The position numbers and the translations under genes are program-made. Below are positions 5,969 to 49,697 of a DNA stretch of 64,000 nt, in pieces. This stretch comes from Octopus sinensis. Taxonomy: Eukaryota. The notes below the pieces were generated by a model. The model was given only the letters and a program-made list of their open reading frames with translations, was not told the DNA's origin and searched no databases. The first letter of the stretch is position 1. Each line of letters begins with the position of its first letter. The DNA is taken from the NCBI RefSeq assembly GCF_006345805.1, contig NC_042998.1:172298001-172362000 (forward strand). The letters are read 5' to 3'.

Positions 5969-6145
5969 GAGGAAGATAATGCAGCTCTAGCTTCTGACAC
6001 AACAAATTCTCAGACTGAATTCTTATATGATGATGTATTTGAAGAACATGTCTCTGAGACAAATCCTGACTCTGAGTATATTAATGATAATGTCACATTC
6101 ACTCTACCTACCGATGAAACAGAGGTTCAATTTGATGAAATGGAT
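5969..6145 (+). CDS. PPP1R12A: Probable acidic cassette exon (EEDNAALASDTT...TEVQFDEMD), phase 0 to 0; 5' boundary uncertain
   Basis: Open acidic frame ending GAT|gtgagt. The pyrimidine tract precedes several AGs; the AAG at 5966-5968 gives a 177-nt symmetric exon. No recognised vertebrate counterpart. Confidence 0.6.
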
Positions 6146-9625: not shown

Positions 9626-9841
9626 GTGCCTTCTTCACCAAGTGGTACACAACCTTCCCTGGCAAGCACTCCCTCTGTCATTGGATCCCAAAGCAAGACC
9701 TCCACAGTCCAATCCACGAAACCAGAATTACGTAAATTTGGCAGTACTAGTACGGTTCCTAATGAGACTAATGAACATGATGCTGATGTTATTCCTCGCT
9801 CAGCTTCCACTCCTCGACTTGCATGTGATGATGATTCTATT
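9626..9841 (+). CDS. PPP1R12A: Exon with LRKFGSTS and RSASTPRL motifs, phase 0 to 0
   Basis: tttttag acceptor; ATT|gtgagt donor. The motifs align with human MYPT1 LRKTGSY (S445) and RSASSPRL (S472/S473). Confidence 0.93.
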
Positions 9842-12809: not shown

Positions 12810-13125
12810 GCCTAGCTTGCTTCTCAACCATGTGGTTTCAAGTTAAGTCCCATTGCGTGGCACCTTCGGCAAGTGTCTTCTATAACCCTGGGCTAGCCAA
12901 AGTCTTGGGAATGGATTTGGTTAATGGAAACTGAAAGAAGCTTGTCATGTATACATGTATTTGTATGTTTGTGTATTCCTTGGCAACATGTGATGTTAAT
13001 TTCTAGTCCTAATGGAAAACATGTCTGGCCATGGAAAATATTATCTTACTTAGAAACAGATGAGGGTTGCTGACAGGAAGGGCATGTGGTCACAGAAAAT
13101 TTGCTTCAACAAATTCATCATCATC
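12810..13125 (+). mobile_element. tRNA-headed SINE copy with an RTE-like 3' part
   Basis: Same head as other copies (gtggcacct..ggcaagtgtcttcta...ggatttggt.a.ggaaactgaaagaagc), followed by gacaggaagggca. Confidence 0.65.
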
Positions 13126-14449: not shown

Positions 14450-14878
14450 ATTATCCAGCCGCTCGTCCAGCTATAGCCGGTTCTCTAGTCCCTATAGCTC
14501 CTTTACCAGACATTATGTGCCTTACTATCACAGACTTGCAGAAAAACGTACTGAAAAGCTGAAGAACTCCACTGTAGCCACAACAGCGACCATAACAACA
14601 CCGACTTCAACTACTGCACCAAGCATCAGCAGAAGTTCCCTGGTAATAGGAGATAGTTTTGGTGTTAAGAAAAATGCTGAATCAACTGATACCGATACAA
14701 AAGTGACATCATCGCTGCCTTCTCCTAGCATTACTGTAACCATTGCTAGCACTACTCCTACAAACACTCAAGCTAATACTTCAACAACCACTACTTCAGT
14801 TTCAATTTCCACACCTACTACAACTACAACAACAAGCATCACAACGGATATATCAAGACCATCATCGACAACTAAAAG
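14450..14878 (+). CDS. PPP1R12A: Ser/Thr-rich central-insert exon (RLSSRSSSYSRF...TTTTTTSITTDISRPSSTTKR), phase 2 to 2, symmetric
   Basis: tccttacag acceptor; AAG|gtatac donor; 429 nt open. SSRSSSYSR resembles human LRTSSSYTR, and a Thr-rich run precedes the inhibitory motif as in MYPT1. Confidence 0.88.
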
Positions 14879-17294: not shown

Positions 17295-17385
17295 AACGTT
17301 CGAACCTCCAAAACGAGATGAGGAGACTGAAACTCAGAGAAAAGCTCGAGCTAGGAAGGCCAGGGAGACCCGTCGTTCAACACAG
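17295..17385 (+). CDS. PPP1R12A: Inhibitory-phosphorylation region exon (RTFEPPKRDEETETQRKARARKARETRRSTQ), Thr696-equivalent, phase 2 to 0
   Basis: cattag acceptor; CAG|gtttgt donor. Clear match to MYPT1 RSYLTPVRDEESESQRKARSRQARQSRRSTQ. Confidence 0.97.
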
Positions 17386-17982: not shown

Positions 17983-18210
17983 GGTATCTCAACAGAAGAT
18001 ATTGCTAGAGCAAAGGCTCTGAAGCAAACTGGAACTGAAGAAAAAGAAAACAAAGAAAAAGAACAAGAATGTGATAAGGACTCTGACAAAAATGATCTTG
18101 CTAAGGACCGATTATCAAGTGAGATCAGTAAGGATGGCTTACTAGACACAACTGTTGCAAGTGATGAAGTGAACTTGAGAAGTCATCGAACATTGGAAGA
18201 ACGGAGCCAT
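17983..18210 (+). CDS. PPP1R12A: Exon (GISTEDIARAKALKQ...TLEERSH), phase 0 to 0
   Basis: ttttcccacag acceptor; CAT|gtaagc donor. Completes RRSTQ-G(V/I)(T/S)xxD as in MYPT1 GVTLTDL. Confidence 0.95.
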
Positions 18211-20485: not shown

Positions 20486-21250
20486 ATCATCATCGTTTAA
20501 CGTCTGCTTTCCATGCTAGCATGGGTTTGACGGTTCGACCGGGGTCTGGGAAGCCAGGAGGCTGCACCAGGCTCCAGTCTGATCTGGCAGTGTTTCTACA
20601 GCTGGATGCCCTTCTTAATGCCAACCACTCCATGAGTGTAGTGGGTGCTTTTTACGTGCCACTGGCACAGGTGCCAGGGGAGGGTGGCAACGGCCACGAT
20701 CGGTTGGTGCTTTTTATGTGCCACTGGCACGGAAGCCAGTTAGGGCGACGCTGGCATCGGCCACGTTCGGATGGTGCTTTTAACATGCCACCCGCACAGG
20801 TATCACAACTACAATTTCAGTTTGATTTTTATTTGATGTTGATGTACTTGACTCAATAGGCCTCTCCAAGCACAGCAGGTCGCCCTACGATCCAAGGTAA
20901 GCACAGCAGGCCGTCCTGTGATCCAAGGTACTATGGATGGCCTGGGGCTGCTATGTGAAGCTGGTGCAGGAAACAGCCATGAACTCACATTACTTGTCAG
21001 GTCTTCACAGTCACAGTATGTCTTCAGAGATCTCGGTCTTTCATCATTGCCTCTGTGAGGCCCAACGCTCGAAGGTCTTCCTGGGTCTACCTCTACCCCA
21101 GATTCCTTCAACTGTTTGGGAGTTGACTTCTTCACACATCTCTCCTCATCCATCTGTAGTACATGACCATACCAGTGGAATTCATTAGCTTGGACTGCCT
21201 TTGCTTGACGACACAATGTCACAGCACTGGGTGTTCCAGAGACCCTTGCT
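20486..21250 (-). mobile_element. 3' fragment of an RTE-clade LINE with (GAT)n tail
   Basis: Minus frame gives HWYGHVLQMDEERCVKK (RTE RT C-terminal motif). The 3' end is shared with copies at 40263 and 47662. Confidence 0.85.
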
Positions 21251-22083: not shown

Positions 22084-22257
22084 CTCATGGTCAGCATAAC
22101 CAAAGAAATGTTCTACTAAGTGTATCTGATATTAGTAACACAGGAAATTCTACTGTTGGTTTCAACAGAACATCTTCATTTCGAAACCGATTTCGAAATG
22201 AAGAGTCAGAAAAGAAGAAAGAAGAAGAAACAAAAGACCCAAGTAAAGAAACGAAAG
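22084..22257 (+). CDS. PPP1R12A: Exon (SHGQHNQRNVLLSVSD...RTSSFRNRFRNEESEKKKEEETKDPSKETK), phase 1 to 1; alternative donor possible after 22242
   Basis: Strong ttttcctttccag acceptor; AAG|gtgcca donor, or CAA|gtaaag in the same phase. Charged open frame. Confidence 0.85.
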
Positions 22258-24826: not shown

Positions 24827-24930
24827 CTGATAAAGAAAAAGATTCAGAGAGAAGAGAATCGTCCGCCTTGAAAGCCCGCCGAGCCAAGCGGGAAAGAAGA
24901 TCAACAGGAGTTATTAATTACAATCTAAAG
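24827..24930 (+). CDS. PPP1R12A: Exon with Thr853-equivalent site (DKEKDSERRESSALKARRAKRERRSTGVINYNLK), phase 1 to 0
   Basis: ttattcctgaag acceptor; AAG|gtatgt donor. Matches MYPT1 RPREKRRSTGV. Confidence 0.95.
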
Positions 24931-25721: not shown

Positions 25722-26090
25722 TGGCTATGTGGTTAAGTAGTTTGCCTTCCAACCACATTGTTCCAGGTTCTGTCCCACTGTGTGACACGTTTGATAAGTG
25801 TCCTTTACTATAGCCCCAGGTGACCAAAGCATTGTGAGTAGATATGGTTGATGGGAACAGAAAGGAGTTAACTGTATGTTTGTCTGCCTGTCTTCTTGTC
25901 TTAATATTGCATGGTAGTTGTAAAATGAACTTCTGTGAGAACACATCCAACCACAGGGAAATATTACCTTTGTTGCAGAACCAGTGAGGGTGACAGGAAG
26001 GGCATCTGGTTGTTGAAGCTCTGTTTCCATAAATTTTATCTGATCCATGCAAGCATGGAAGAGTGAATGTTGGTTGTGATGAACATACTA
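25722..26090 (+). mobile_element. tRNA-headed SINE copy ending about 80 nt upstream of the 26169 exon
   Basis: Head tggctatgtggttaagtag...ggttctgtcccactg; tail gcatggaa...gaatgtt shared with the RTE 3' end. Confidence 0.7.
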
Positions 26091-26168: not shown

Positions 26169-26225
26169 AGTGATGAGGAGTCCAATTCTGTATCAAAGGA
26201 AGAGAATGAAAGTGATGACAGCACA
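26169..26225 (+). CDS. PPP1R12A: Exon (SDEESNSVSKEENESDDST), phase 0 to 0; last long-form exon found in the window
   Basis: Long pyrimidine tract plus ttgcag acceptor; ACA|gtaagt donor. Resembles the MYPT1 DSDENEQEQQSD segment after T853. Confidence 0.92.
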
Positions 26226-30371: not shown

Positions 30372-31657
30372 CATGGGATCTTTTCCTTTTGATGGATGGA
30401 ATTTCTAGTTAACTAAACAATTTGAAACTTCGTATACTGGTAGAATGTGTCAAAAGAAAACATTATTTTCACTTGGCTTTTTTGAGAAAATTGTAATTTG
30501 TAAGTTTAACGTAGTTTAATTCTTCGAATTTTAACCAATGAATTGCCAGCATTTGAGCTCAAATCATTTGCTGCGTTATCGATATTGATAAACAAACGAG
30601 GAGACGCACGCCACATACAGACACACACACACACTCACATATATTCAGATACATACACACGTACACTTGCACACACACACACACACACTCTGTCACTCTC
30701 TCAAACACATGCATATATATTTGCACAAGCACATAGTAATTAATATATAAGCGTACACACACATACAAACGGAGATATACATACACACACATACGCGCGC
30801 ACACACACACATCCGTGTTATTCATCCTTCTCTCTTCTGTCTGTCTCCGCACTTGCTGCGTTATCGATATTGATAAACAAACGAGGAGGCTAGAAATAAC
30901 AGCCATATCTCTTAAATTGATGAATTTCATCGCCCAATAAAAATATTAACGATTTTTTACCAAAAAGGCTTCTCCCATGGTTTTGAAGGGCCAAAATGTA
31001 TGCCCCAGCTTGTCGGAGGCTCTGATATAAATTGGGAAAAAAATCCTCGGCACCATTGCATAATTGGTACTTAATTTATCGACCCCGAAACGATGAAACA
31101 TTGACCCCCCCCCCATCATTTCTGGTTTATTTACCTTTTGTGCAAATTTGTTCCGGCAAGGGGCAAAACACAGAGGGGACAAAGCATGAGATACAAAAGT
31201 ATTAAGTCGATTCTATCGACACCAGTGCGAACTCACGAACGTGTATGTATGCTTGTGTGTGTATGTATATCTCCTTTTGTATGTGTGTGTACGCTTATAT
31301 ATTAATTACTATGTGCTTGTGCAAATGTATATGCATGTGTTTGAGAGAGAGACAGAGAGTGACAGTGTGTGTGCAAGTGTACATGTGTATGTATCTGAAT
31401 ATGTGTGTGTGTGTATGCGGCGTGCATCTCCTCGTTTGTTTATCGATAATGTAGCAAATGATTTGAGCTCAAATGCTGGCAATTCATTGGTTAAAATTCA
31501 AAGAATTAAACTACGTTAAACTTAAAATTTACAAATTTATCAAAAAAGCCAAGTGAAAATAATGTTTTCTTTTGACACATTCTACCAGTATACGAAGTTT
31601 CAAATTGTTTAGTTAATTAGAAATTCCATCCATCAAATGGAAAAGATCCAAATCATG
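30372..31657. mobile_element. Non-autonomous DNA element of about 1.29 kb with very long (about 420-440 bp) terminal inverted repeats
   Basis: 30372-30808 is the reverse complement of 31237-31657, including gaaacttcgtatactggtagaatgtgtcaaaagaaaacattattttcacttggc and the microsatellite-like portion. Confidence 0.88.
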
Positions 31658-34900: not shown

Positions 34901-36614
34901 GTTAGAAGGCCTAGTAGTGTGTGCACGCACACACACACACACACAGAGTTCTGCTGGAACAGTTTTGTCACTGTGAGCAGGGTAAAGAAAACAGTTGGAG
35001 CCCTGGGGCACTATATGTATGCATGTATTATGTATGTATACATGCATGCAATCACACATACATATATATATGTACTAGCAGTATCGCTCGGGTTTGTTTC
35101 GACCCTTTAGAATTGGAATTTTTAAGAAGTAAAAATTTTGCATTGTGTAGCTTGTTATTCTCTTTAAGTGAACATTTTTCTGGTTGAAATACATTGAAAA
35201 ATGGTGACACAGCAGTCAAAAAATTGTAAAAAATAGGGATTTTCATAGAAAAAAAATCACCTTTTTGATGTAAATAATTTTTGGTCTTAACATGGTCCAA
35301 TTTGAATTTTATCTTCTACGGAATGAAGAGCAAGCCTTCATCTATCATACTCTCAATTTTGGTCAACTTGCGCCACAGGGTCTCAGAGGAGTTAGTGTTA
35401 TTTGAAGGCTACCAAACCTGCCACACACAGACAACTTCAGCTTTATATATGTGTGCATTTATATATGTTTGTGTATATGTTTGGGCAAGAGGCATATTTG
35501 TGTTTCCCTCTCAACCATGTTTTTGGGCACATTAAGCAAGTGCCTTCTGATGTAGTCTTAGTCTGACCAAATTCTTGTGAGTGCATTTGGTAGATGGCAA
35601 CTGAAAGATTATTTTCAGTGTTTGTGTGAGGGTATTTCCCTTGTCTATACATGTGATTGTAAACAGTGACTTCACCTATGGTGTCATTTTCTTGCAGTCC
35701 ACTGTGAAAGTATATTTAGGCTTCTTAACATGTGTAATTTTTGTAAACAATTGGCTTGTTCAAATGGTGTTTTGTTTCCTGTTCACTTTATAATCATGTC
35801 TGTGTTGTTTGTTGTTTTGATGAGCTGAGAAATTATTACCTCACTTGGAAACAAGTAGAGGTTGGCAACAGGTTGAGCATCTAGCCATAGTAAACTCTGC
35901 GCTAGCATACTCTTGTCTGACTATTGCAAGTGTGGAAAAATAGATGTTGAAGCAGTAATGATATGTATTCACACACATACACTCAGATAATGTTATCAAA
36001 GTATTTATTTAAAATGAATCAAGGTATTTATTTAAAATGAATCAAAGCTCCAAATATTGTATCAGCCTGTTATTCTTATCAAGCCTTTTGCTTCATTCCT
36101 GAAAGTGTGGCTTCCATTTGTTGTTGTTTTTTTTTTATTTTTTATTTTAGCAATTAATTGAAAATACTGCATTTAGTTATCTCATTTAATGCATCAGTTG
36201 AACAGAGACTAAATTTAGTGTGGGTAAGGGAAGAAAGTACTTAAATAATTTCTGCCTGTTTTTAAGTATGACAAGTTTAATCTAGTAATGGAGTAAAACA
36301 ATTCATGTTGGACTACTTGTTGAGTACAAAGTGAATCATCACTAATGTCAGTGTTTGTGTGCTGTTGGCAGTGTAGCTTATTTCTTCGTTTTGAAAAATT
36401 CTCTTCAAATTTAGCCTTGTCTGCTCACACTTGCCCATGTGTTCTGTGGCCAGAAATAGGAAGACCAATTCATAACTTCTACTGATTGTTTTCACTGATT
36501 GTAGTAGTAGAGCTAACAATTTACCATGATAAATATTTTGTTTACTTTTTTTTAAGTGGTTATTTTCTGTTTTTATTTTTTCCCCCCACCTCTTTCCTTT
36601 CTTTTCTCTCTCAC

Positions 36615-36769
36615 TCATTCACTCACCAGTTGCAGAATACTAAAAATAGATTAATCCTTGGAAAGGAAGGTGTGTTAGACAAGCTGAGCCTTTTCAGCAG
36701 GAAGCATATGTGTTGCCTGAAACAGCAGTCATGAATTTTGCTTCTCACTCCCCTTTCCAAAATTATAAA
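36615..36769 (+). promoter_or_regulatory. Candidate internal promoter motifs: Inr-like TCATTC (36615-36620), E-box CAGTTG (36627-36632), MEF2 consensus CTAAAAATAG (36640-36649), E-box CATATG (36705-36710), TATAAA (36764-36769)
   Basis: Motifs read directly, 340-490 nt upstream of the 37105 ATG, in a stretch without recognisable repeats. Short AT-rich motifs arise often by chance here. Confidence 0.3.
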
Positions 36770-37104
36770 CTTTAAAGAACTTCCTTCTAAATTTTCTTTT
36801 TCAATGTTTATATTACTATCTCTCTAATATCTCCTTGATTGCCTGCTACTCTATCTTGTTCTTAGCTTCTTATTTGTCTGAACTGATAGAATAACTATTA
36901 TATCTTAAGCAGCTACTGGAAATTCCCCTGCTGCTGCTGTGGGCGTTATTCTAACTTTGGCCCAGACACAGAGCTCAAACAAGCAGCAGTAACATATTGG
37001 ACACAGCCACAACAACTTTACCATAACTGATAATTTATTTTATGAAAACAGTTATCTCACTGCTGTCTCTATCTATCTATCTAATAATAATAATATAATT
37101 CATT

Positions 37105-37308
37105 ATGTCATATGGATCCTATCGCTATGGATTGCCGACATCATCTTTAGGGGCTAATTCTGGGTCCTCCATTCTTGCGAAAAATGGAAATAACTATCTT
37201 GGTTCTTCACTTGGTTCCGGTTATTCCTCTCGGTCTAGTTCAACAAGCAGTCTTTCAAGTTTAAGTGGATCCACTGGTGGTATTTACCCAGGCTCTTTAG
37301 GATCACTG
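37105..37308 (+). CDS. Putative alternative first coding exon (MSYGSYRYGLPTSSLG...IYPGSLGSL) of a short C-terminal MYPT isoform
   Basis: ATG with in-frame TAA at 37096-37098 and no AG in between; 68 open codons; donor CTG|gtatgt in phase 0, the same phase as the 26225 donor. The link to the MYPT gene is inferred. Confidence 0.7.
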
Positions 37309-37626
37309 GTATGTAACTGTTCTTATGATTGGCTGACTTTTTTTTTTTTTTTTTTTTTTTTGCTGCATATATATACCAGCTGATTTATGTACTGAAACCT
37401 TTAACTTTTACATAATGGTTATTGTATATAAGTTTTCATTGGTATCTTCATTAAAATATTTCTTCTGTTTACTACTTTACCTGCTTCTTTTTATGTTTAA
37501 TTCCTCTGAATGGAAGAAAAGTGTAGAAGACATTTGATATTATTAAATATTTATGTTACATGTAATAAGTTAAAGCTGACTGTAAAGTGAAATGCAAACC
37601 TGCAATGTGTGAAGTGGATATTATCT

Positions 37627-38053: not shown

Positions 38054-38345
38054 ATAGGCACAGGTGTAACTGTGTGGTTAAGAAATTTGCTTCTCAATCA
38101 TATGCTTCAGGGTTCAATCTCACTATGTGCCACGTTGGGCAAGTGCTGGGTTGACTAACCTTGTGAGTGGCTTTGGTAAATGGAAACGGAAAGAAGACTG
38201 TGTGTTTGTGTGTGTTCTTGCCTTGCCATGGTATGATAGTTGTAAATGATTGTTACTGTCATACAAGCCATGTCGTCTGACCATGCAGAATATTTCTTTG
38301 TTTGGAAACAGGTGAGAGTTGGTAACAGAAAGGTCATCTAGCTGA
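38054..38345 (+). mobile_element. tRNA-headed SINE copy
   Basis: ataggcacagg.gt..ctgtgtggttaagaa...gggttcaatctcac head, as at 49528. Confidence 0.75.
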
Positions 38346-38819: not shown

Positions 38820-39422
38820 ATGTAATCCACTTAAAGGAATTTTAACACCATCTCCTTTGAAATAGTCACCTTGCACAACATTACACTAGTTCCAATGTTC
38901 CTGCCACTTTTGAAATTTGGCCTGTAAGTTGTTTTCTGTAAGTGAATCGTGGACCTTCTGCCGTTCACTCTTGATCTCAACAACAGTGTTAAAATGGTGA
39001 CTTTTGGGCTGCATTTTGGGGGAAGAAATGGAAGTCTGCAGGTGTTGAATCTGGCAAATAGGGCAGGTGTGGAATCAATACTATGTTGTTTTTGATGAAA
39101 AACTCATGATTGAGGAGAGCTTGGTGACAGGGTGCATCGTTTTGAAGAATCCAATTATTTGCACGCCACAGATCTGGTCAATTTCACCAAATGGCCTCTC
39201 TGAAATACTTCAAAACATTGTCGATTGTCCTCCGATGATCCTCATGCACAAGCTGATGAATTTTCTCCACATTTCCAGGATTGACACTCGTGGCAGGTCT
39301 TCTGGACTGCTTATCTTCCAGATCACTCATCGTCTTTCAAGAGTGTTCTTCCACTTTCGAAGTATCTGTGCCACTAGAAACATTGTGTATGATACATTGC
39401 CTTGTTGCTGCGAGCTTGCCAA
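38820..39422 (-). mobile_element. Internally deleted, degenerate mariner transposase
   Basis: Minus frames give WHRYFESGRT.LKDDE.SGR..RPATSVNPGNVEKIHQLVHEDHRRTI (HTH), WILQNDAP (HHDNAP), PHLPYLPDS...ADFHFFPKM (YSPDLAP region) and QGDYF.GD (C-terminus). Confidence 0.85.
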
Positions 39423-39452
39423 TGCATGTGTGTATGTATATGTGTGTATATG

Positions 39453-39490
<38 letters not shown>

Positions 39491-39742
39491 ATATGTGTAT
39501 ATATATATGTGTGTGTGTATATGTATATATATATATGTGTGTGTGTATATGTATATATATATGTGTGTGTGTGTATATATATATATGTATATATATATAT
39601 AATGTGTGTATATATATATATCTACACATGTGTACATATATATGTATATATATATATGTATGTATGTCTGTGTGTATGTATATGTGTGTATATATATATA
39701 TATGTATGTGTGTATATATATATGTATGTATATGTATGTGTG

Positions 39743-39773
<31 letters not shown>

Positions 39774-39948
39774 ATATATATATGTATGTATATGTATGTG
39801 TGTATATATATATGTATGTATATGTATGTGTGTATATATATATGTATGTATATGTATGTGTGTATATATATATGTATGTATATGTCTGTGTGTATATATA
39901 TATATGTATGTATATGTCTGTGTGTGTATATATATGTATGTATATGTC

Positions 39949-39985
<37 letters not shown>

Positions 39986-40262
39986 GTATGTATGTATGTA
40001 TGTCTGTGTGTATCTATCTATATATATATATATATGTATATGTCTGTGTGTATGTATGTGTGTATATATGTATGTGTGTATATGTATGTGTGTATATATG
40101 TATGTGTGTATATATATGTATGTGTATATGTGTGTATATATATATGTATGTATATGTATGTATGTATGCGTGTATATATATATATATATATATGTATGTA
40201 TATGTATTATATTTATTTATGTATATATATATATATATGTATGTATGCATGTGTGTATGTAT
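39423..40262. repeat. Compound TA/TG microsatellite of about 840 bp with a 30-bp higher-order unit
   Basis: Direct reading; the 10-residue period in the spurious ORF ([10 protein letters not shown]) corresponds to 30 nt. Confidence 0.95.
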
Positions 40263-40520
40263 ATCATCATCATCATCATCATCATCGTTTAGCATCCGCT
40301 TTCCATGCTAGCATGGGTTGGACGGGTCAACTGGGGTCTGTGAAGCTGGAAGGCTTCGTCAGGCCCAGTCAGATCTGGCAGTGTTTCTACGGCTGGATGC
40401 CCTTCCTAACGCCAACCACTCCGCGAGTGTAGTGGGTGTTTTTTACGTGCCACCTGCACAGGTGCCAGACAGAGCTGGCGAACGGCCACAAACGGATGGT
40501 GCTTTTACGTGTCACCGGCA
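40263..40520 (-). mobile_element. Young RTE 3'-end retroposon copy with (GAT)n tail
   Basis: catcatcatcgtttagcatccgctttccatgctagcatggg...ggatgcccttcctaacgccaacc, with CpGs retained. Confidence 0.85.
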
Positions 40521-40544
40521 CATATATATATATGTATGTATGCA

Positions 40545-40575
<31 letters not shown>

Positions 40576-40920
40576 GTATGTGTGTCTGTATGCATATATG
40601 TATGTGTGTATGTATGCATATATGTATGTGGTATGTATGCATATATGTATGTGTGTATGTATGCATATATGTATGTGTGTATGTATGCATATATGTATGT
40701 GTGTATGTATGCATATATGTATGTGTGTATGTATGCATATATGTATGTGTGTATGTATGCATATATGTATGTGTGTATGTATGCATATATGTATGTGTAT
40801 GTATGTGTGTATGTATATATGTATGTGTATGTATTATATGTATGTATATATGTGTATGTATGCATATGTGTGTATATATATGTATGCATATGTATTTATA
40901 TATGCATGTATATATATATG
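40521..40920. repeat. Compound microsatellite with a 24-bp unit (gtatgtatgcatatatgtatgtgt)
   Basis: Direct reading; 8-residue period YAYMYVCM in the spurious ORF. Confidence 0.95.
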
Positions 40921-43900
40921 AGTACTCACTTGAAGTATTTAATCACATGGTTTGTAATATTTGATATCAACATTATTGTGCGTCCCATCAAGGGTGAGAT
41001 GCTTGTGAAAACTGCAATAACTTTAAAGCCAATCTTTTACAGTTTACTAGTGTTTGGTACATTAATATTAATAATAATAAAGTTGATTTCAATTGTTTCA
41101 ACTGTTGTACTTAGATGTCTCTATAAGACTTGAAATTCAGCATTAATTCATGTGCATTCTATATTGCCATATTATTTTCTACAAAATATTCAGACCCCTA
41201 TTTTATGAGCTGTGAGAGCCTCTATATTTTTACTCTATCTTCTAGCAACATCTACCAAATTTTCCTCAAATCACTTTTACAGTCTTAACAAAAAATGGGC
41301 ATGGTTATGTTTGTACAGATTTCATCAAAAGACTAAAGAACTGCAACCCTCTTTATATGTTGGTCATTATTAGCTACAATTGATAGATTAAGAAGTAAGA
41401 ATCAGATATGTAGAAAATTGATTACCGAGTATTCATTTTTCTCCATGCAACCAAATGTTCTAACCGTATTTTTACGACACTGATCTGAATATTCAGTAAC
41501 ACAATAAAATGCCATGCCATACTCCTTTTTGTAGCTACAGGCTAATTTGTAACATTGGTTGGCGACAACACCTTGCTCTTTGGCGCCCTTGGTGGAGAGT
41601 GCTCTGTTGCAAACATTTGGACAATCTCTTCAGTCTAAGGATAATACATTTTGCTGTTTCCTAATGTACCTCTACTTAGGTTTATGCCTTCAAAGTAACT
41701 GTTAGCCTCACTGCATTGATTGTTAATGTCACCTCTGTACATGACTTGTGCAAGTTTCAAAAACCATTCTTCTACATTTAATTTTTTTAGTGATTACTGG
41801 ACTATAGAAATGATACCCTGTGAACAACTCTTTCCTGATTGACAAAGTCTAGGCAGAGTATCCCTAGTTAAGCACTTGTAAATCTTTCATTAGGAAGAGA
41901 GCATTGGTAGCACCCTGTCATGGCACATCCCTGAGTAGTGTATTATCTATGCTAATTCTCTTTAATAATCAGTTGTACTATAACTCTCTGTAACTTTCAT
42001 AACCTTGTCCAACATTTTGATGCCTCTGTAGCTATTTCGTTCTAGAACTTTACTTTTACCTTTGTAGCAGTTTACAACGATAAACTGTGTAAATTGTTGG
42101 GTATGACATCTTGTGTTGCCTGATTAACTGAGCAAGTGACTAGGATATGGACCTACTTTACCAAATATATAAGCATCCCAGTGACTATCCTTGATAGTCC
42201 AACTGCCTTTTTCCCTCTATTTTTTATCCCATTTTTGATCATTCTGCTGTCAACTCCAATGACTGATCCTTCTGTTGGGTTTACCCAAAGTGCTTCACTT
42301 CCCCAAGCATTTTGCTCATAATAATATTTATAATATTATAATACTTATAATATTTTCTATATTGCTTTTAGGCATTGTTGATGGCAAATGTGCTGCTATC
42401 ATTCTTTAAACACTTCTCTCCATTTCAGTTTTGTATATTTCTCTGCCTTACAATTTGGAACACTTTATCCCTCTAATAGTACAGAATATGTACAGACTTT
42501 TTGTTTTCTGATTCTTCCTCTTTATTAAGTACACCTGATATCTAGCTTTTTCTTAATCACCTCATATTGTTCTCTGCTGCCCCTTTTTTGTTTCAGTCTT
42601 TCCAGGCCTGTCTATTAGCTATTATGGTTCTATCTACTGTTCCACAACCATATCACCTTCATTCAATCTGGCAATAATTATGCATTAGGTTATATTGTAG
42701 AAACTTCAGGTTGTTCTTTATAAGTCTCTATTTCCTTTTTCCTTCTGTCATACACATCAGCTAGTACATCTCTGGATCCACATCTTGGTCAAGAGCTTGT
42801 TCATCTTCCATATCTTCCTTTTCCAAATTACTTTGTTGTTCTGGTCAGTCTATCTCTTTCTCTGAAGTCATTGATAATTACTGTGTTGAGTGGTATATTC
42901 TTCACCTTGGAAAGGCTTAGCGTCCATAACAATCTTTATCTCATTTCCTGGTTATTGTAAAGTATATATGGCATGTGTCTTTACTTGATAGGCAGGTGTT
43001 GCAAATAGACAGGTCACTGGTTTCACGAAATTTCAATACTTGTGATCCTTCCTTACGCCCTGTCTCATATCCATTTAAACCTGCTATCAATTACATGTAA
43101 TTGGAGCAGACAAATTGTATTTTTAAAGTTTTTAATCACAGTTATTTCTCATGTTTAGAGCAGTATATTTGCCTAAATCATTTGGGCAATTGAAAAATAT
43201 ATTAGAAAAATACAACATAAATTCTTTCTTAGCTGATTGGAATTTATCTTACTAGCATTTTGAAATTGATATCTTTCAAAACCTTTACAGCTTATAAGCA
43301 GTGATTGCACTTTACTAAATATCATTACAGCTGATCTCTTTTAACATAGTAGCATTATGTAACTCATTGTTTTTCTATATCTCTCAATGCCAAATGAATG
43401 TAAGTAACTATTTATGTCACGTTGATTCTATATAGTTCCACTCCTCTTTTATTTCTTTGTTATGAATTGCAGAAGGTTCACATCTTTAACATGATTGTAT
43501 TTGATGAATGTAAATGGCATTATGCTTTCACCTTAGAAATCTTTCAACAGAATTACCACATTTGCCTTATTTACCCTCTACCTAAATTTTATAGTACACC
43601 AAGACAAATAAACCCTGTTGTAACATACATTGTTTGGATATATTTTCAGATAGTTTTTCAAATGCATATGTTATTTCCCCACTTCAGACATATATAGATA
43701 CTCTTATTGTTCTTGTCAGTAATTTAGAATGGGAAATATCAAACAATATTTACGACTCTGTTACCGTGTTACATAGGTATTTGAATGTGTTATGTTAACT
43801 ATCTACTTTGTACTATTATGTTAATTACTATAATACCATTAATTCTGTTATTGTTAGTTATTTATTGTGGCTGTTACAATCAGTTGGTTGTTACGTAAAA

Positions 43901-47483: not shown

Positions 47484-47893
47484 TTAATCCTTTTGCTACC
47501 ATATTTGTTATAATAACACTTTGTTGTATTTAATTTTGAAAACAATGAAAAATTTGGCAAAATAACTTATTAGTCATTATTAAACTGGTGTTTTGAAATA
47601 TAAATTAGCATGAAATTTGGATGGAAGGGTTTAACTTTGATCACTTTGAAATAGGAAGATCGTGCAGGTGGCACGTAAAAAGCACCCACTACACTCACGG
47701 AGTGGTTGGCGTTAGGAAGGGCATCCAGCTGTAGAAACATTGCCAGATAAGACTGGAGCCTGGTGCAGCCTTCTGGCTTCCCAGATCTCCGGTGAACCAT
47801 CCAACCCATGCTAGCATGGAGAATGGACGTTAAACGATGATGATGATGATGATGATGTATCATACGGTGATAGGTTAGTATTAAAAAGGTTAA
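47484..47893. mobile_element. TTAA-flanked piggyBac-like MITE (similar to 23097) interrupted by an RTE 3'-end copy
   Basis: TTAA-tccttttgctacc ... gtattaaaaagg-TTAA; insert at 47662-47857. Confidence 0.6.
47662..47857 (+). mobile_element. RTE 3'-end retroposon copy with (GAT)n tail
   Basis: ggttggcgttaggaagggcatccagc...gcatggagaatggacgttaaacgatgatgatg, the reverse complement of the 40263 family. Confidence 0.85.
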
Positions 47894-48359: not shown

Positions 48360-48885
48360 TATTGGGTTGTCCAGAAAGTGTGTGCCGATTTATAGTAGTT
48401 TACATTTCGACTTATTTTAGAACATGGTTGAGTCCATAAAATAGGATTTGACTACACCTCCATTTAGAGTACAGTTTAAGCCATCTTTTCGTGGAAGAAG
48501 ATTTATGTTCCTATAACCTGTGTTAATTCTGTAACCCTTTAAAATGGAAGATAAGAAAGTTCATTTTCGGCACTTGATGCTTTGGGAATAAGACAAAAAT
48601 TGCTGCAGCTTGGCTGGGATGTGTTACCCCACCCTCCATATTCACCAACATTGCTTCTTCGGATTTCCACTTATTCAGGTCTCTGCAGAATAGTCTTAAT
48701 GATAAAAATTTTAATTCGTTGGATGATGTAAAAAGATACCTTGATGAATTCTTTGCCATAAAACCACCTCAATTCTGGGAAGAGGATATTTTCAGGTTAA
48801 AAGAAAGATGGAGACATGCAACAAAGTGGTTCATATTTGGTTCTTGCCTTTAAAAATCGGCTTGAACTTCCCAGACAACCCAATA
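48360..48885 (+). mobile_element. Mariner deletion derivative with both TIRs and TA target-site duplications
   Basis: TA-ttgggttgtccagaaagt ... acttcccagacaacccaa-TA. MEDKKVHFRHLMLWE (ATG 48544) is fused to RQKLLQLGWDVLPHPPYSP.IA.SDFHLFRSLQNSL...WEE.IFRLKERWR. Confidence 0.93.
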
Positions 48886-49035: not shown

Positions 49036-49437
49036 TCTTTCTCTCTTTCTCTTTCTCTTTTTTCAGTCATTTGACTGCGGCCATGCTGGAGCACCACCTT
49101 TAATCGAGCAAATCGACCCCGGGACTTATTCTTTGTAAGCCCAGTACTTATTCTATCGGTCTCTTTTTGCCGAACCGCTAAATGACGGGGACATAAACAC
49201 ACCAGCATCGGTTGTCAAGCAATGCTAGGGGGACAAACACAGACACACAAACACACACATACATACATATATACATATATACGACGGACTTCTTTCAGTT
49301 TCCGTCTACCAAATCCACTCACAAGGCTTTGGTCGGCCCGAGGCTATAGTAGAAGACACTTGCCCAAGGTGCCACGCAGTGGGACTGAACCCGGAACCAT
49401 GTGGTTGGTAAACAAGCTACTTACCACACAGCCACTC
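49036..49437 (-). mobile_element. Young full-length tRNA-derived SINE
   Basis: Minus strand gagtggctgtgtggtaag (A-box-like) ... ccgggttcagtccc (B-box-like); many CpGs intact; simple-repeat tail. Confidence 0.88.
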
Positions 49438-49527
49438 GTCCAAATACTAATGTTTTACGTTCAAACCAACTAGATCTGGCCTCTCACACTTATCCTACAT
49501 TGTCATTCTAAAAATAAATAACCACAT

Positions 49528-49697
49528 ATAGGCACAGGCATGCCTGTGTGGTATGAAACTTGCTTTCCAATCACATGGTTCTGGGTTCAGTCCCACTGTG
49601 TGGCACCTTGGGAAAGTGTCTTCTACTATAACCTCGGACTGACCAAAACCTTGTGAGTGGATTTGGTAGATGAAAACTGAAAGAAGCTTGTGTGTGT

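What the first reader, a model, noticed from the sequence alone, without database searches (positions are those of the whole stretch)
37096..37320. Intronic start exon suggests an M20/HS-M21-like short myosin-phosphatase subunit in a cephalopod
Seen: about 11 kb after the last long-form exon lies an ATG (37105) with an in-frame TAA 9 nt upstream and no intervening AG. It opens 68 Ser/Gly/Tyr-rich codons and ends at a good donor (CTG|gtatgt) in phase 0, the same phase as the 26225 donor, so both could splice to the same downstream coiled-coil exon. All three frames from the upstream AG at 36912 are closed, so this is not an internal coding exon. Known: vertebrate PPP1R12B (MYPT2) uses an internal promoter to make the small M20/HS-M21 subunit, which lacks the PP1-binding and ankyrin N-terminus but keeps the C-terminal coiled coil/leucine zipper. 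Inference: an equivalent, ancient or convergent, small regulatory subunit exists in this mollusc. It would lack both Rho-kinase inhibitory sites.
Basis: partly seen in the sequence, partly recalled or inferred. Interest (0 to 1): 0.8.

Follow-up and report, generated by a model that had tools for sequence, protein, structure and literature searches.

The report
Possible start exon for short MYPT
Inside a long intron of a cephalopod-like myosin-phosphatase targeting-subunit (MYPT) gene lies a 68-codon serine/glycine/tyrosine-rich exon that looks truly coding and can only be read from its own ATG, so it may start a short M20-like protein, but no transcript or cross-species data could be reached to prove it.

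Summary
TAA is at 37096-98, ATG at 37105-07, and 68 open codons run to CTG|gtatgt (exon end 37308, phase 0). No AG lies between stop and ATG. The last recognisable long-form exon (26169-26225) also ends in phase 0.

The host gene is a MYPT/PPP1R12 homologue (PDB 2KJY, E=2.9e-8). Both inhibitory-site motifs (RRSTQ about 17.38 kb, RRSTG about 24.9 kb) lie upstream.

The ATG-ORF-donor layout alone is not beyond chance: 5 such loci on the + strand, 1 on the - strand. The segment does look coding:
- 3-base periodicity is reached by only 2 of 3519 control windows, both in a microsatellite.
- GC is 43% against about 25% in the flanks.
- Ser codons come from both families, and the other five frames are closed.
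- The composition holds from the ATG to the donor.

With a strong candidate mini-exon at 36630-36669 (phase 0 to 1), or with phase-1 donors upstream, it could put most of the exon into the long form.

No coiled-coil exon is in the window, and no homologue, transcript or promoter evidence was obtainable.

Verdict: probably a real exon, about 0.5 that it starts a short MYPT isoform. M20 equivalence is untested.

The parts
37105..37308 (+). Candidate coding exon: ATG plus 67 codons, Ser/Gly/Tyr/Leu-rich, ending in phase 0
   Evidence: GC is 43% against 22-28% just outside. Ser codons are TCA6 TCC6 TCT6 AGT4 AGC1, and the other five frames are closed. Periodicity chi2 is 25.8, reached by 2 of 3519 control windows. 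No repeats.
37096..37098 (+). In-frame TAA 9 nt upstream of the ATG. It closes the frame to any upstream acceptor.
37309..37314 (+). Donor gtatgt (CTG|gtatgt), followed by a T24 run at 37338-37361
   Evidence: PWM score 7.44 bits, 98th percentile of + strand GT sites, with 81 sites as good or better. T run. In-frame codon-usage score falls from +0.05 to -1.07 bits per codon across the donor.
37149..37150 (+). AG inside the ORF (catcatctttag|GGG). Possible phase-1 acceptor giving an internal exon 37151-37308.
   Evidence: Acceptor score -0.36, within the range of this gene's real acceptors E1, E3 and E5. Against intron status of 37105-37149: its peptide matches the composition of the rest of the exon, and only 0.023% of 51,630 control windows score as high.
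36630..36669 (+). Candidate 40-nt mini-exon (LQNTKNRLILGKE plus one extra base, G), phase 0 to 1. An alternative start at 36636 keeps the frame.
   Evidence: The 70 nt upstream are 86% pyrimidine, rank 3 of 3312 AG sites. Donor AAG|gtgtgt scores 9.4 bits, 99.3rd percentile. Only frame 0 is open, and it ranks 3rd-4th among + strand exon candidates by splice signals. However, the - strand null gives similar scores at 2-3 loci, and the codon score is unremarkable.
37042..37098 (+). Upstream in-frame ATG and 18-codon uORF ending at the TAA. AG at 37050-51 is a possible 5'UTR acceptor that would remove this uATG.
36900..36995 (+). GC-richer island (44-58% GC) with CTG and CAG runs, closed in all frames. 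Possible 5'UTR or promoter-proximal sequence, function unknown.
   Evidence: The window 36891-37094 also shows high periodicity (21.6).
26169..26225 (+). Last recognisable long-form exon in the window (SDEESNSVSKEENESDDST), phase 0 to 0, donor ACA|gtaagt
24827..24930 (+). Exon with the second inhibitory-site motif (RAKRERRSTGV, T853-like), phase 1 to 0
17295..17385 (+). Exon with the first inhibitory-site motif (RKARETRRSTQ, T696-like)
   Evidence: With the next exon it matches PDB 2kjy_A (PPP1R12A) at E=2.9e-8.

Best explanation
Positions 37105-37308 are a genuine protein-coding exon of the MYPT gene that is read from its own ATG.

Proposed mechanism:
- A transcript begins inside the roughly 38+ kb intron that follows exon 26169-26225. 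It starts either just upstream of the ATG, or at a non-coding exon spliced to the AG at 37050-51.
- Translation starts at 37105 and makes a 68-residue disordered Ser/Gly/Tyr-rich head.
- The phase-0 donor at 37308 joins the same downstream exon that the long form reaches from the phase-0 donor at 26225.
- The product would be an N-terminally truncated MYPT. It would lack the PP1-binding and ankyrin part and both inhibitory Thr motifs, and would keep the C-terminal coiled coil.
- By analogy with vertebrate M20/M21, it would pair with the coiled coil of full-length MYPT or with myosin.
- The 3' two-thirds of the exon (37151-37308) may also be used as an internal exon of long forms.

Shown: exon anatomy, coding character, phases, and the position relative to the two phosphorylation motifs.

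Inferred: the transcription start, the splice partner, the protein's existence and its function.
For: - Anatomy verified.
- Host gene is MYPT. Both RRST motifs are upstream.
- Coding character:
  - periodicity chi2 25.8 against a 99th percentile of 17.2, reached by 2 of 3519 windows, both in a microsatellite;
  - second most Ser-rich open stretch of both strands, using both the TCN and AGY Ser codon families as the true MYPT exons do;
  - a GC step at both exon ends;
  - codon score drops to -0.73 before the ATG and -1.07 after the donor;
  - no repeat covers it.
- Start-exon character:
  - the 14 residues between the ATG and AG 37150 share the composition of the rest, with only 0.023% of 51,630 control windows as high, while the true intron 3' ends of this gene all score negative;
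  - the other frames of the same DNA do not share this composition;
  - no phase-0 acceptor exists inside the ORF, and every upstream AG lies before the TAA.
- Donor phase 0 equals the phase of the 26225 donor.
- Precedent: M21 arises from an internal transcription start in Ppp1r12b (PMC4552530; PMC10851227).
Against: - No transcript, CAGE or peptide data could be consulted.
- No orthologous sequence was reachable, so conservation is untested.
- The ATG-ORF-donor layout alone recurs by chance in this window.
- The codon-usage model trained on the gene's own exons gives only 0.05 bits per codon, below every true exon.
- There is no CpG island or recognisable core promoter.
- An in-frame uATG/uORF sits at 37042 if transcription starts further upstream.
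- The coiled-coil exon is outside the window, so the join is inferred from phase alone, a 1-in-3 coincidence.
- The peptide shows no similarity to the vertebrate MYPT C-terminal half.
- An internal-exon reading exists (AG 37150 plus the mini-exon).
Confidence: 0.48

Rival explanations
1. Internal cassette exon only. The real exon is 37151-37308, entered at AG 37149-50 in phase 1. It belongs to long MYPT isoforms by one of two routes:
- 26225 to mini-exon 36630-36669 (phase 0 to 1) to 37151, giving ...DDST|LQNTKNRLILGKE|G-ANSGSS...
- Directly from the phase-1 donors of E7 (22257) or E6-short (18118), skipping the second RRST site.

On this reading the ATG and the TAA are intronic coincidences.
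For: - The AG at 37150 has an acceptor score within the range of this gene's true acceptors.
- The phases fit exactly.
- The mini-exon has the third most pyrimidine-rich 70-nt upstream tract of 3312 AGs and a 99.3rd-percentile donor.
- Its single open frame is the one needed.
- A Ser/Tyr-rich stretch at this position is part of the long form in vertebrate MYPT1 (my recollection of the human sequence, a lead only).
Against: - The 45 nt upstream of AG 37150 do not look like an intron 3' end. They continue the exon's frame-specific composition (0.023% of controls) and its GC level.
- The mini-exon's codon score is ordinary (16th percentile from the top).
- Comparable splice-signal scores occur at 2-3 loci on the - strand.
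Confidence: 0.13
2. No current function. The segment is a chance or decaying open frame in low-complexity intronic DNA, for example a relic of an ancestral Ser/Tyr-rich MYPT exon. It is neither spliced nor translated.
For: - The layout recurs by chance.
- There is no homologue in any searchable collection.
- The codon-usage score is weak.
- There is no promoter signature.
- Ser-rich frames can arise from T/C-rich DNA, as at 28.4-28.8 kb.
Against: - Periodicity is far above the intronic null without any tandem repeat.
- The Ser codon families are mixed.
- The compositional domain is bounded exactly by an ATG and a good donor.
- It lies on the sense strand, at the position where MYPTs carry a Ser/Tyr-rich linker.
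Confidence: 0.27
3. Start exon of something else. The exon opens a separate transcript nested in the MYPT intron, or one that ends on exons unrelated to the MYPT C-terminus. The product would then not be an M20-like protein.
For: - The splice partner is unseen.
- The head resembles generic Ser/Gly/Tyr-rich low-complexity heads found in many protein families (my knowledge).
- It shows no similarity to MYPT.
Against: - It is on the same strand and inside the gene.
- The donor phase matches the long-form donor.
- No convincing further exon, and none of the MYPT C-terminal motifs or charged stretches searched for, was seen in 37.3-64 kb of the + strand.
Confidence: 0.1

Closest known systems
Vertebrate M20/M21 (HS-M21) small subunit of myosin phosphatase, made from an internal transcription start in PPP1R12B (MYPT2)
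   Same: A start site inside a MYPT gene, downstream of the ankyrin/PP1-binding part and of both inhibitory Thr sites. The predicted product is the C-terminal part only (PMC4552530; PMC10851227).
   Different: - Here nothing is shown beyond one exon. The join to the coiled coil, the promoter and the protein are all inferred.
- The 68-residue head shows no detectable similarity to vertebrate MYPT C-terminal sequence.
- The host is presumably the unduplicated invertebrate MYPT gene, not a MYPT2 paralogue.
- No M20 has been identified in Drosophila (PMC3723691), so shared ancestry is not expected a priori.
Cassette-exon splicing of MYPT1 (central insert, leucine-zipper plus/minus exon 24)
   Same: Alternative exons in the disordered central and C-terminal region of MYPT change the regulatory properties (PMC5754374; PMC5087845). 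The rival reading (37151-37308 with or without the mini-exon) would be of this kind.
   Different: The vertebrate cassettes are internal exons. This one carries its own ATG behind an in-frame stop, with coding-like sequence between the ATG and the internal AG.
Telokin / kinase-related protein from an intronic promoter of the smooth-muscle MLCK gene (my knowledge, not checked here)
   Same: This is another contractile-regulation gene in which an internal promoter expresses the C-terminal, myosin-binding part as an independent small protein.
   Different: It is a different gene family. Telokin's sequence is entirely shared with the long form, whereas the present exon would add a unique head.

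Membership tests
MYPT / PPP1R12 (host gene) | Central inhibitory phosphorylation motif R-R-S-T-Q-G within the conserved basic stretch | tested here: met
   RKARARKARETRRSTQ|GISTEDIARAK (17295-17385 plus 17983 onward) matches PDB 2kjy_A PPP1R12A, E=2.9e-8.
MYPT / PPP1R12 (host gene) | Second ROCK-site motif (RRSTGV, T853-like) followed by an acidic Ser-rich stretch | tested here: met
   RAKRERRSTGV at 24827-24930, then SDEESNSVSKEENESDDST at 26169-26225. This rests on reading and on my recollection of the vertebrate motif.
MYPT / PPP1R12 (host gene) | N-terminal RVxF motif plus ankyrin repeats, and C-terminal coiled coil/leucine zipper | not testable with these tools
   Both lie outside the window. 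No coiled-coil or LZ motif is found in any + frame of the window.
M20/M21-type small subunit | mRNA initiated at an internal promoter of a MYPT gene | not testable with these tools
   No transcript or CAGE data were available. Sequence shows no CpG island or clear core promoter. The exon can only be translated from its own ATG.
M20/M21-type small subunit | The protein consists of the MYPT C-terminal coiled coil/LZ without the PP1-binding part and the inhibitory sites | tested here: inconclusive
   The exon lies 3' of both RRST motifs and its donor phase (0) equals that of the 26225 donor. The acceptor exon is not in the window.
M20/M21-type small subunit | Sequence similarity to M20 or to the MYPT C-terminal region | tested here: inconclusive
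No M20 sequence was available. The part expected to be similar, the coiled coil, is not in the window.
Alternative first coding exon (generic) | ATG preceded by an in-frame stop with no usable acceptor between, open to a functional donor, and coding character from the ATG on | tested here: met
   Caveat: an AG at 37149-50 allows additional internal use.
Conserved protein-coding exon | Orthologous ORF under purifying selection in related species | not testable with these tools
   No cephalopod sequence was found in any collection. The only related locus, L001, shares just the RRSTQ exon.

The most novel reading that the evidence does not exclude
A mollusc makes an M20-like small myosin-phosphatase subunit from an internal start site of its single MYPT gene. 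Expressing the MYPT coiled-coil tail on its own would then either be older than the vertebrate MYPT1/2 duplication, or have evolved twice. The exon may also be dual-use: a first exon for the short form, and an internal exon via AG 37150 and the mini-exon for the long form.
Probability: 0.3. Interest if true: 0.55.

Novelty: new member of a known kind. Interest (0 to 1): 0.35.

Why it matters
M20/M21 is an accessory subunit of vertebrate myosin phosphatase whose function is still poorly understood. No counterpart has been identified in Drosophila (PMC3723691).

A cephalopod counterpart made the same way would show that a free MYPT tail is a recurrent or ancient solution. It would also offer a second, independent system for asking what the small subunit does in muscle.

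If the exon is instead an ordinary cassette exon, or a dead ORF, the finding is only a routine point of gene annotation.

Tried and rejected
Searches for relatives of the 68-residue peptide:
- Word-indexed search of 5.8 billion proteins: none.
- Full HMMER search of 1.84 billion representatives: none.
- JGI metagenomes: one spurious low-complexity hit, L002.
- GTDB genomes: none.
- IMG/VR viral contigs: none.
- PDB: none.
- Pfam: none.

Attempts to find a related MYPT locus:
- Searching with MYPT exons found only P0001/L001. This is a 903-kb ENA contig of a distant relative that shares just the RRSTQ exon, at 76% nucleotide identity. Its homologous region lies beyond the 10 kb that can be fetched.
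- A concatenation of E7 through the candidate exon found nothing.
- An exact look-up of the 92-aa ORF found nothing on record.

Other checks:
- Similarity of the peptide to the human MYPT1 C-terminal half and to the gene's own Ser-rich exon: none after composition adjustment.
- A repeat or transposon origin is rejected.
- RNA genes: none.
- CpG/GC promoter signal: none.
- The comparative paper on myosin phosphatase subunit diversity (Dippold and Fisher 2014) is not held.
- Intermediate-filament-head and FUS-like readings of the peptide were considered. They were dropped because the screens run on 37.3-64 kb (charged-residue screen, tblastn with the MYPT1 C-terminus, MYPT motif regexes) showed no charged coiled-coil-like stretch there. 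Those screens targeted the MYPT tail and would not detect an RNA-binding domain.

Full report
**1. What is there**

The window is AT-rich (about 33% GC), repeat-laden eukaryotic DNA. I read the + strand between about 2.6 and 26.2 kb as a chain of exons of a MYPT/PPP1R12 gene:
- 2635-2795
- 9626-9841 (contains RSASTPRL)
- 14450-14878
- 17295-17385 (RKARETRRSTQ)
- 17983-18118 (alternative donor at 18210)
- 22084-22257
- 24827-24930 (RAKRERRSTGV)
- 26169-26225 (SDEESNSVSKEENESDDST)

The phases run 0 to 1, 1 to 1, 1 to 0 and 0 to 0 from 17983 onward. The identification does not rest on memory alone. The 17.3/18.0 kb peptide matches PDB 2kjy_A, PPP1R12A, at E=2.9e-8.

**2. The observation**

The coordinates are exact:
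- TAA at 37096-98
- ATG at 37105-07
- 68 codons
- CTG|gtatgt with the exon end at 37308, phase 0

No AG lies between the stop and the ATG. Every upstream AG (G at 36909 to 37051) lies 5' of the TAA, and all three frames from 36913 are closed.

The first is an AG at 37149-50 inside the ORF (catcatctttag|GGG), which is a phase-1 acceptor that preserves the frame. The second is an in-frame uATG at 37042, whose 18-codon uORF ends at the TAA.

**3. Is it more than chance?**

The layout alone is not.
- A first-ATG ORF of at least 60 codons reaching a donor at least as good as this one (7.4 bits) occurs at 5 loci on the + strand and 1 on the - strand.
- 81 GT sites on the + strand score as well as this donor.

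The sequence itself is unusual.
- Codon-position nucleotide asymmetry is chi2 25.8. The null has a median of 5.0 and a 99th percentile of 17.2. Only 2 of 3519 non-exonic windows reach it, both in the 40.6 kb microsatellite. True exons of the gene score 3.7-81.
- No tandem or dispersed repeat covers the segment.
- It is the second most Ser-rich open stretch on either strand. The first is a CT repeat that uses TCN codons almost exclusively (31 of 32 Ser codons). The candidate mixes TCN and AGY as the true MYPT exons do, and its other five frames are closed.
- GC is 38-48% inside, 22-28% just upstream, and 20-30% just downstream.
- The in-frame codon score drops from +0.05 to -0.73 before the ATG and to -1.07 after the donor.

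A codon-usage model trained on the gene's mostly Lys/Glu/Asp-rich exons scores it only 0.05 bits per codon. That is rank 5 among 182 ORFs and below all true exons, so this line of evidence is weak.

**4. Start exon or internal exon?**

No phase-0 acceptor exists inside the ORF, so the 26225 donor cannot enter it directly. The AG at 37150 could be used in phase 1. Its score (-0.36) is within the range of true acceptors of this gene.

Phase-1 donors exist at 18118 and 22257. There is also a striking candidate mini-exon at 36630-36669:
- The 70 nt upstream are 86% pyrimidine, rank 3 of 3312 AGs.
- Its donor AAG|gtgtgt scores 9.4 bits.
- Only frame 0 is open.
- It converts phase 0 into phase 1. 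That gives the path 26225 to 36630-36669 to 37151, reading ...DDST|LQNTKNRLILGKE|G-ANSGSS...

This path is self-consistent. However, the - strand yields comparable splice-signal scores at 2-3 loci, and the mini-exon's codon score is ordinary.

One observation argues against an internal-only reading. The 14 residues between the ATG and AG 37150 (SYGSYRYGLPTSSL) have the same frame-specific composition as the rest of the exon. Only 0.023% of 51,630 open control windows score as high. The 3' ends of the gene's true introns all score negative.

The compositional domain thus runs from the ATG to the donor. That is what a translated first coding exon looks like. Dual use, as a first exon and as an internal exon, is possible.

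**5. What could not be shown**

- The coiled-coil/leucine-zipper exons are not in the window, so the splice partner is inferred from phase alone.
- No promoter signature was found.
- No cephalopod sequence exists in any searchable collection.
- The only relative, L001, is distant and covers only the RRSTQ exon.

Conservation and transcription, the two decisive tests, remain open.

**6. Comparison with what is known**

M21 mRNA starts at an internal site in Ppp1r12b (PMC4552530). The C-terminal region of PPP1R12B encodes M20 (PMC10851227). [quoted passage not shown] No M20 has been identified in Drosophila (PMC3723691).

The octopus-type exon would work like the M20 start. Membership of an M20 family is untested.

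**7. Verdict**

- Probably a real coding exon: about 0.75.
- Starts a short MYPT isoform: about 0.5.
- Internal-only cassette exon: about 0.13.
- Non-functional ORF: about 0.27.
- Start of an unrelated transcript: about 0.1.

Interest is modest. If true, it is a new member of a known kind in a new phylum.

Noticed in passing
window 36556-36669: A pyrimidine tract of about 74 nt (82% C/T) is followed by cag|TTGCAG, a 40-nt open stretch and a strong donor (AAG|gtgtgt). This candidate mini-exon sits 435 nt upstream of the ATG. Its phase (0 to 1) would link the 26225 donor to AG 37150.
   Followed up: partly
window 17983-18210: The exon after RRSTQ has two good donors: 18118 (8.3 bits, phase 1) and 18210 (8.1 bits, phase 0). 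Only the first is in frame with the 22084 exon. The second would fit phase-0 exons such as 26169-26225, so alternative splicing that skips the second RRST site is possible.
   Followed up: partly
window 5969-6145: A probable additional acidic exon (DNAALASDTTNSQTEFLYDDVFEEHVSETNPDSEYINDNVTFTLPTDETEVQFDEMD, donor GAT|gtgagt). It has the best codon score of all untrained ORFs (0.43 bits per codon) and very strong periodicity (chi2 57.9). No Pfam match.
   Followed up: partly
window 39400-40960: A large compound (TG/TA)n microsatellite produces artefactual ORFs of up to 414 aa made of C/V/Y/I/M.
   Followed up: no
window 30376-30584 and 31441-31649: An inverted repeat with 209-nt arms, 96% complementary and 856 nt apart. 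It coincides with the highest CpG observed/expected of the window (about 1.2 at 30.3-30.9 kb). It looks like a foldback-type mobile element.
   Followed up: no
window 12817-12949, 25742-25876, 35526-35621, 38087-38205, 49289-49697: A dispersed short repeat family (about 130 nt, 60-88% identity, both orientations) that looks SINE-like. A second family lies at 20486-20677, 40365-40468 and 47662-47857.
   Followed up: no
window 48555-48811 (+): Broken frames read ...HPPYSPTLLL.../...SDFHLFRSLQNSLNDKNFNSLDDVKRYLDEFF...FWEEDIFRLKERW. From memory this resembles the C-terminus of a mariner-type transposase. Pfam gave no hit.
   Followed up: partly
L001 10088-10180 (ENA ERZ25071447 ctg87168, 903 kb): A large eukaryotic contig in a metagenome assembly carries a MYPT RRSTQ exon (84% aa and 76% nt identity to the window). 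No other window exon is found within 10 kb on either side, so it is a distant relative with longer introns.
   Followed up: partly
window 36891-37094: The non-coding stretch just upstream of the ATG has raised GC (up to 58%), CTG and CAG triplet runs, and high 3-base periodicity (chi2 21.6), although all three frames are closed. It could be 5'UTR.
   Followed up: no
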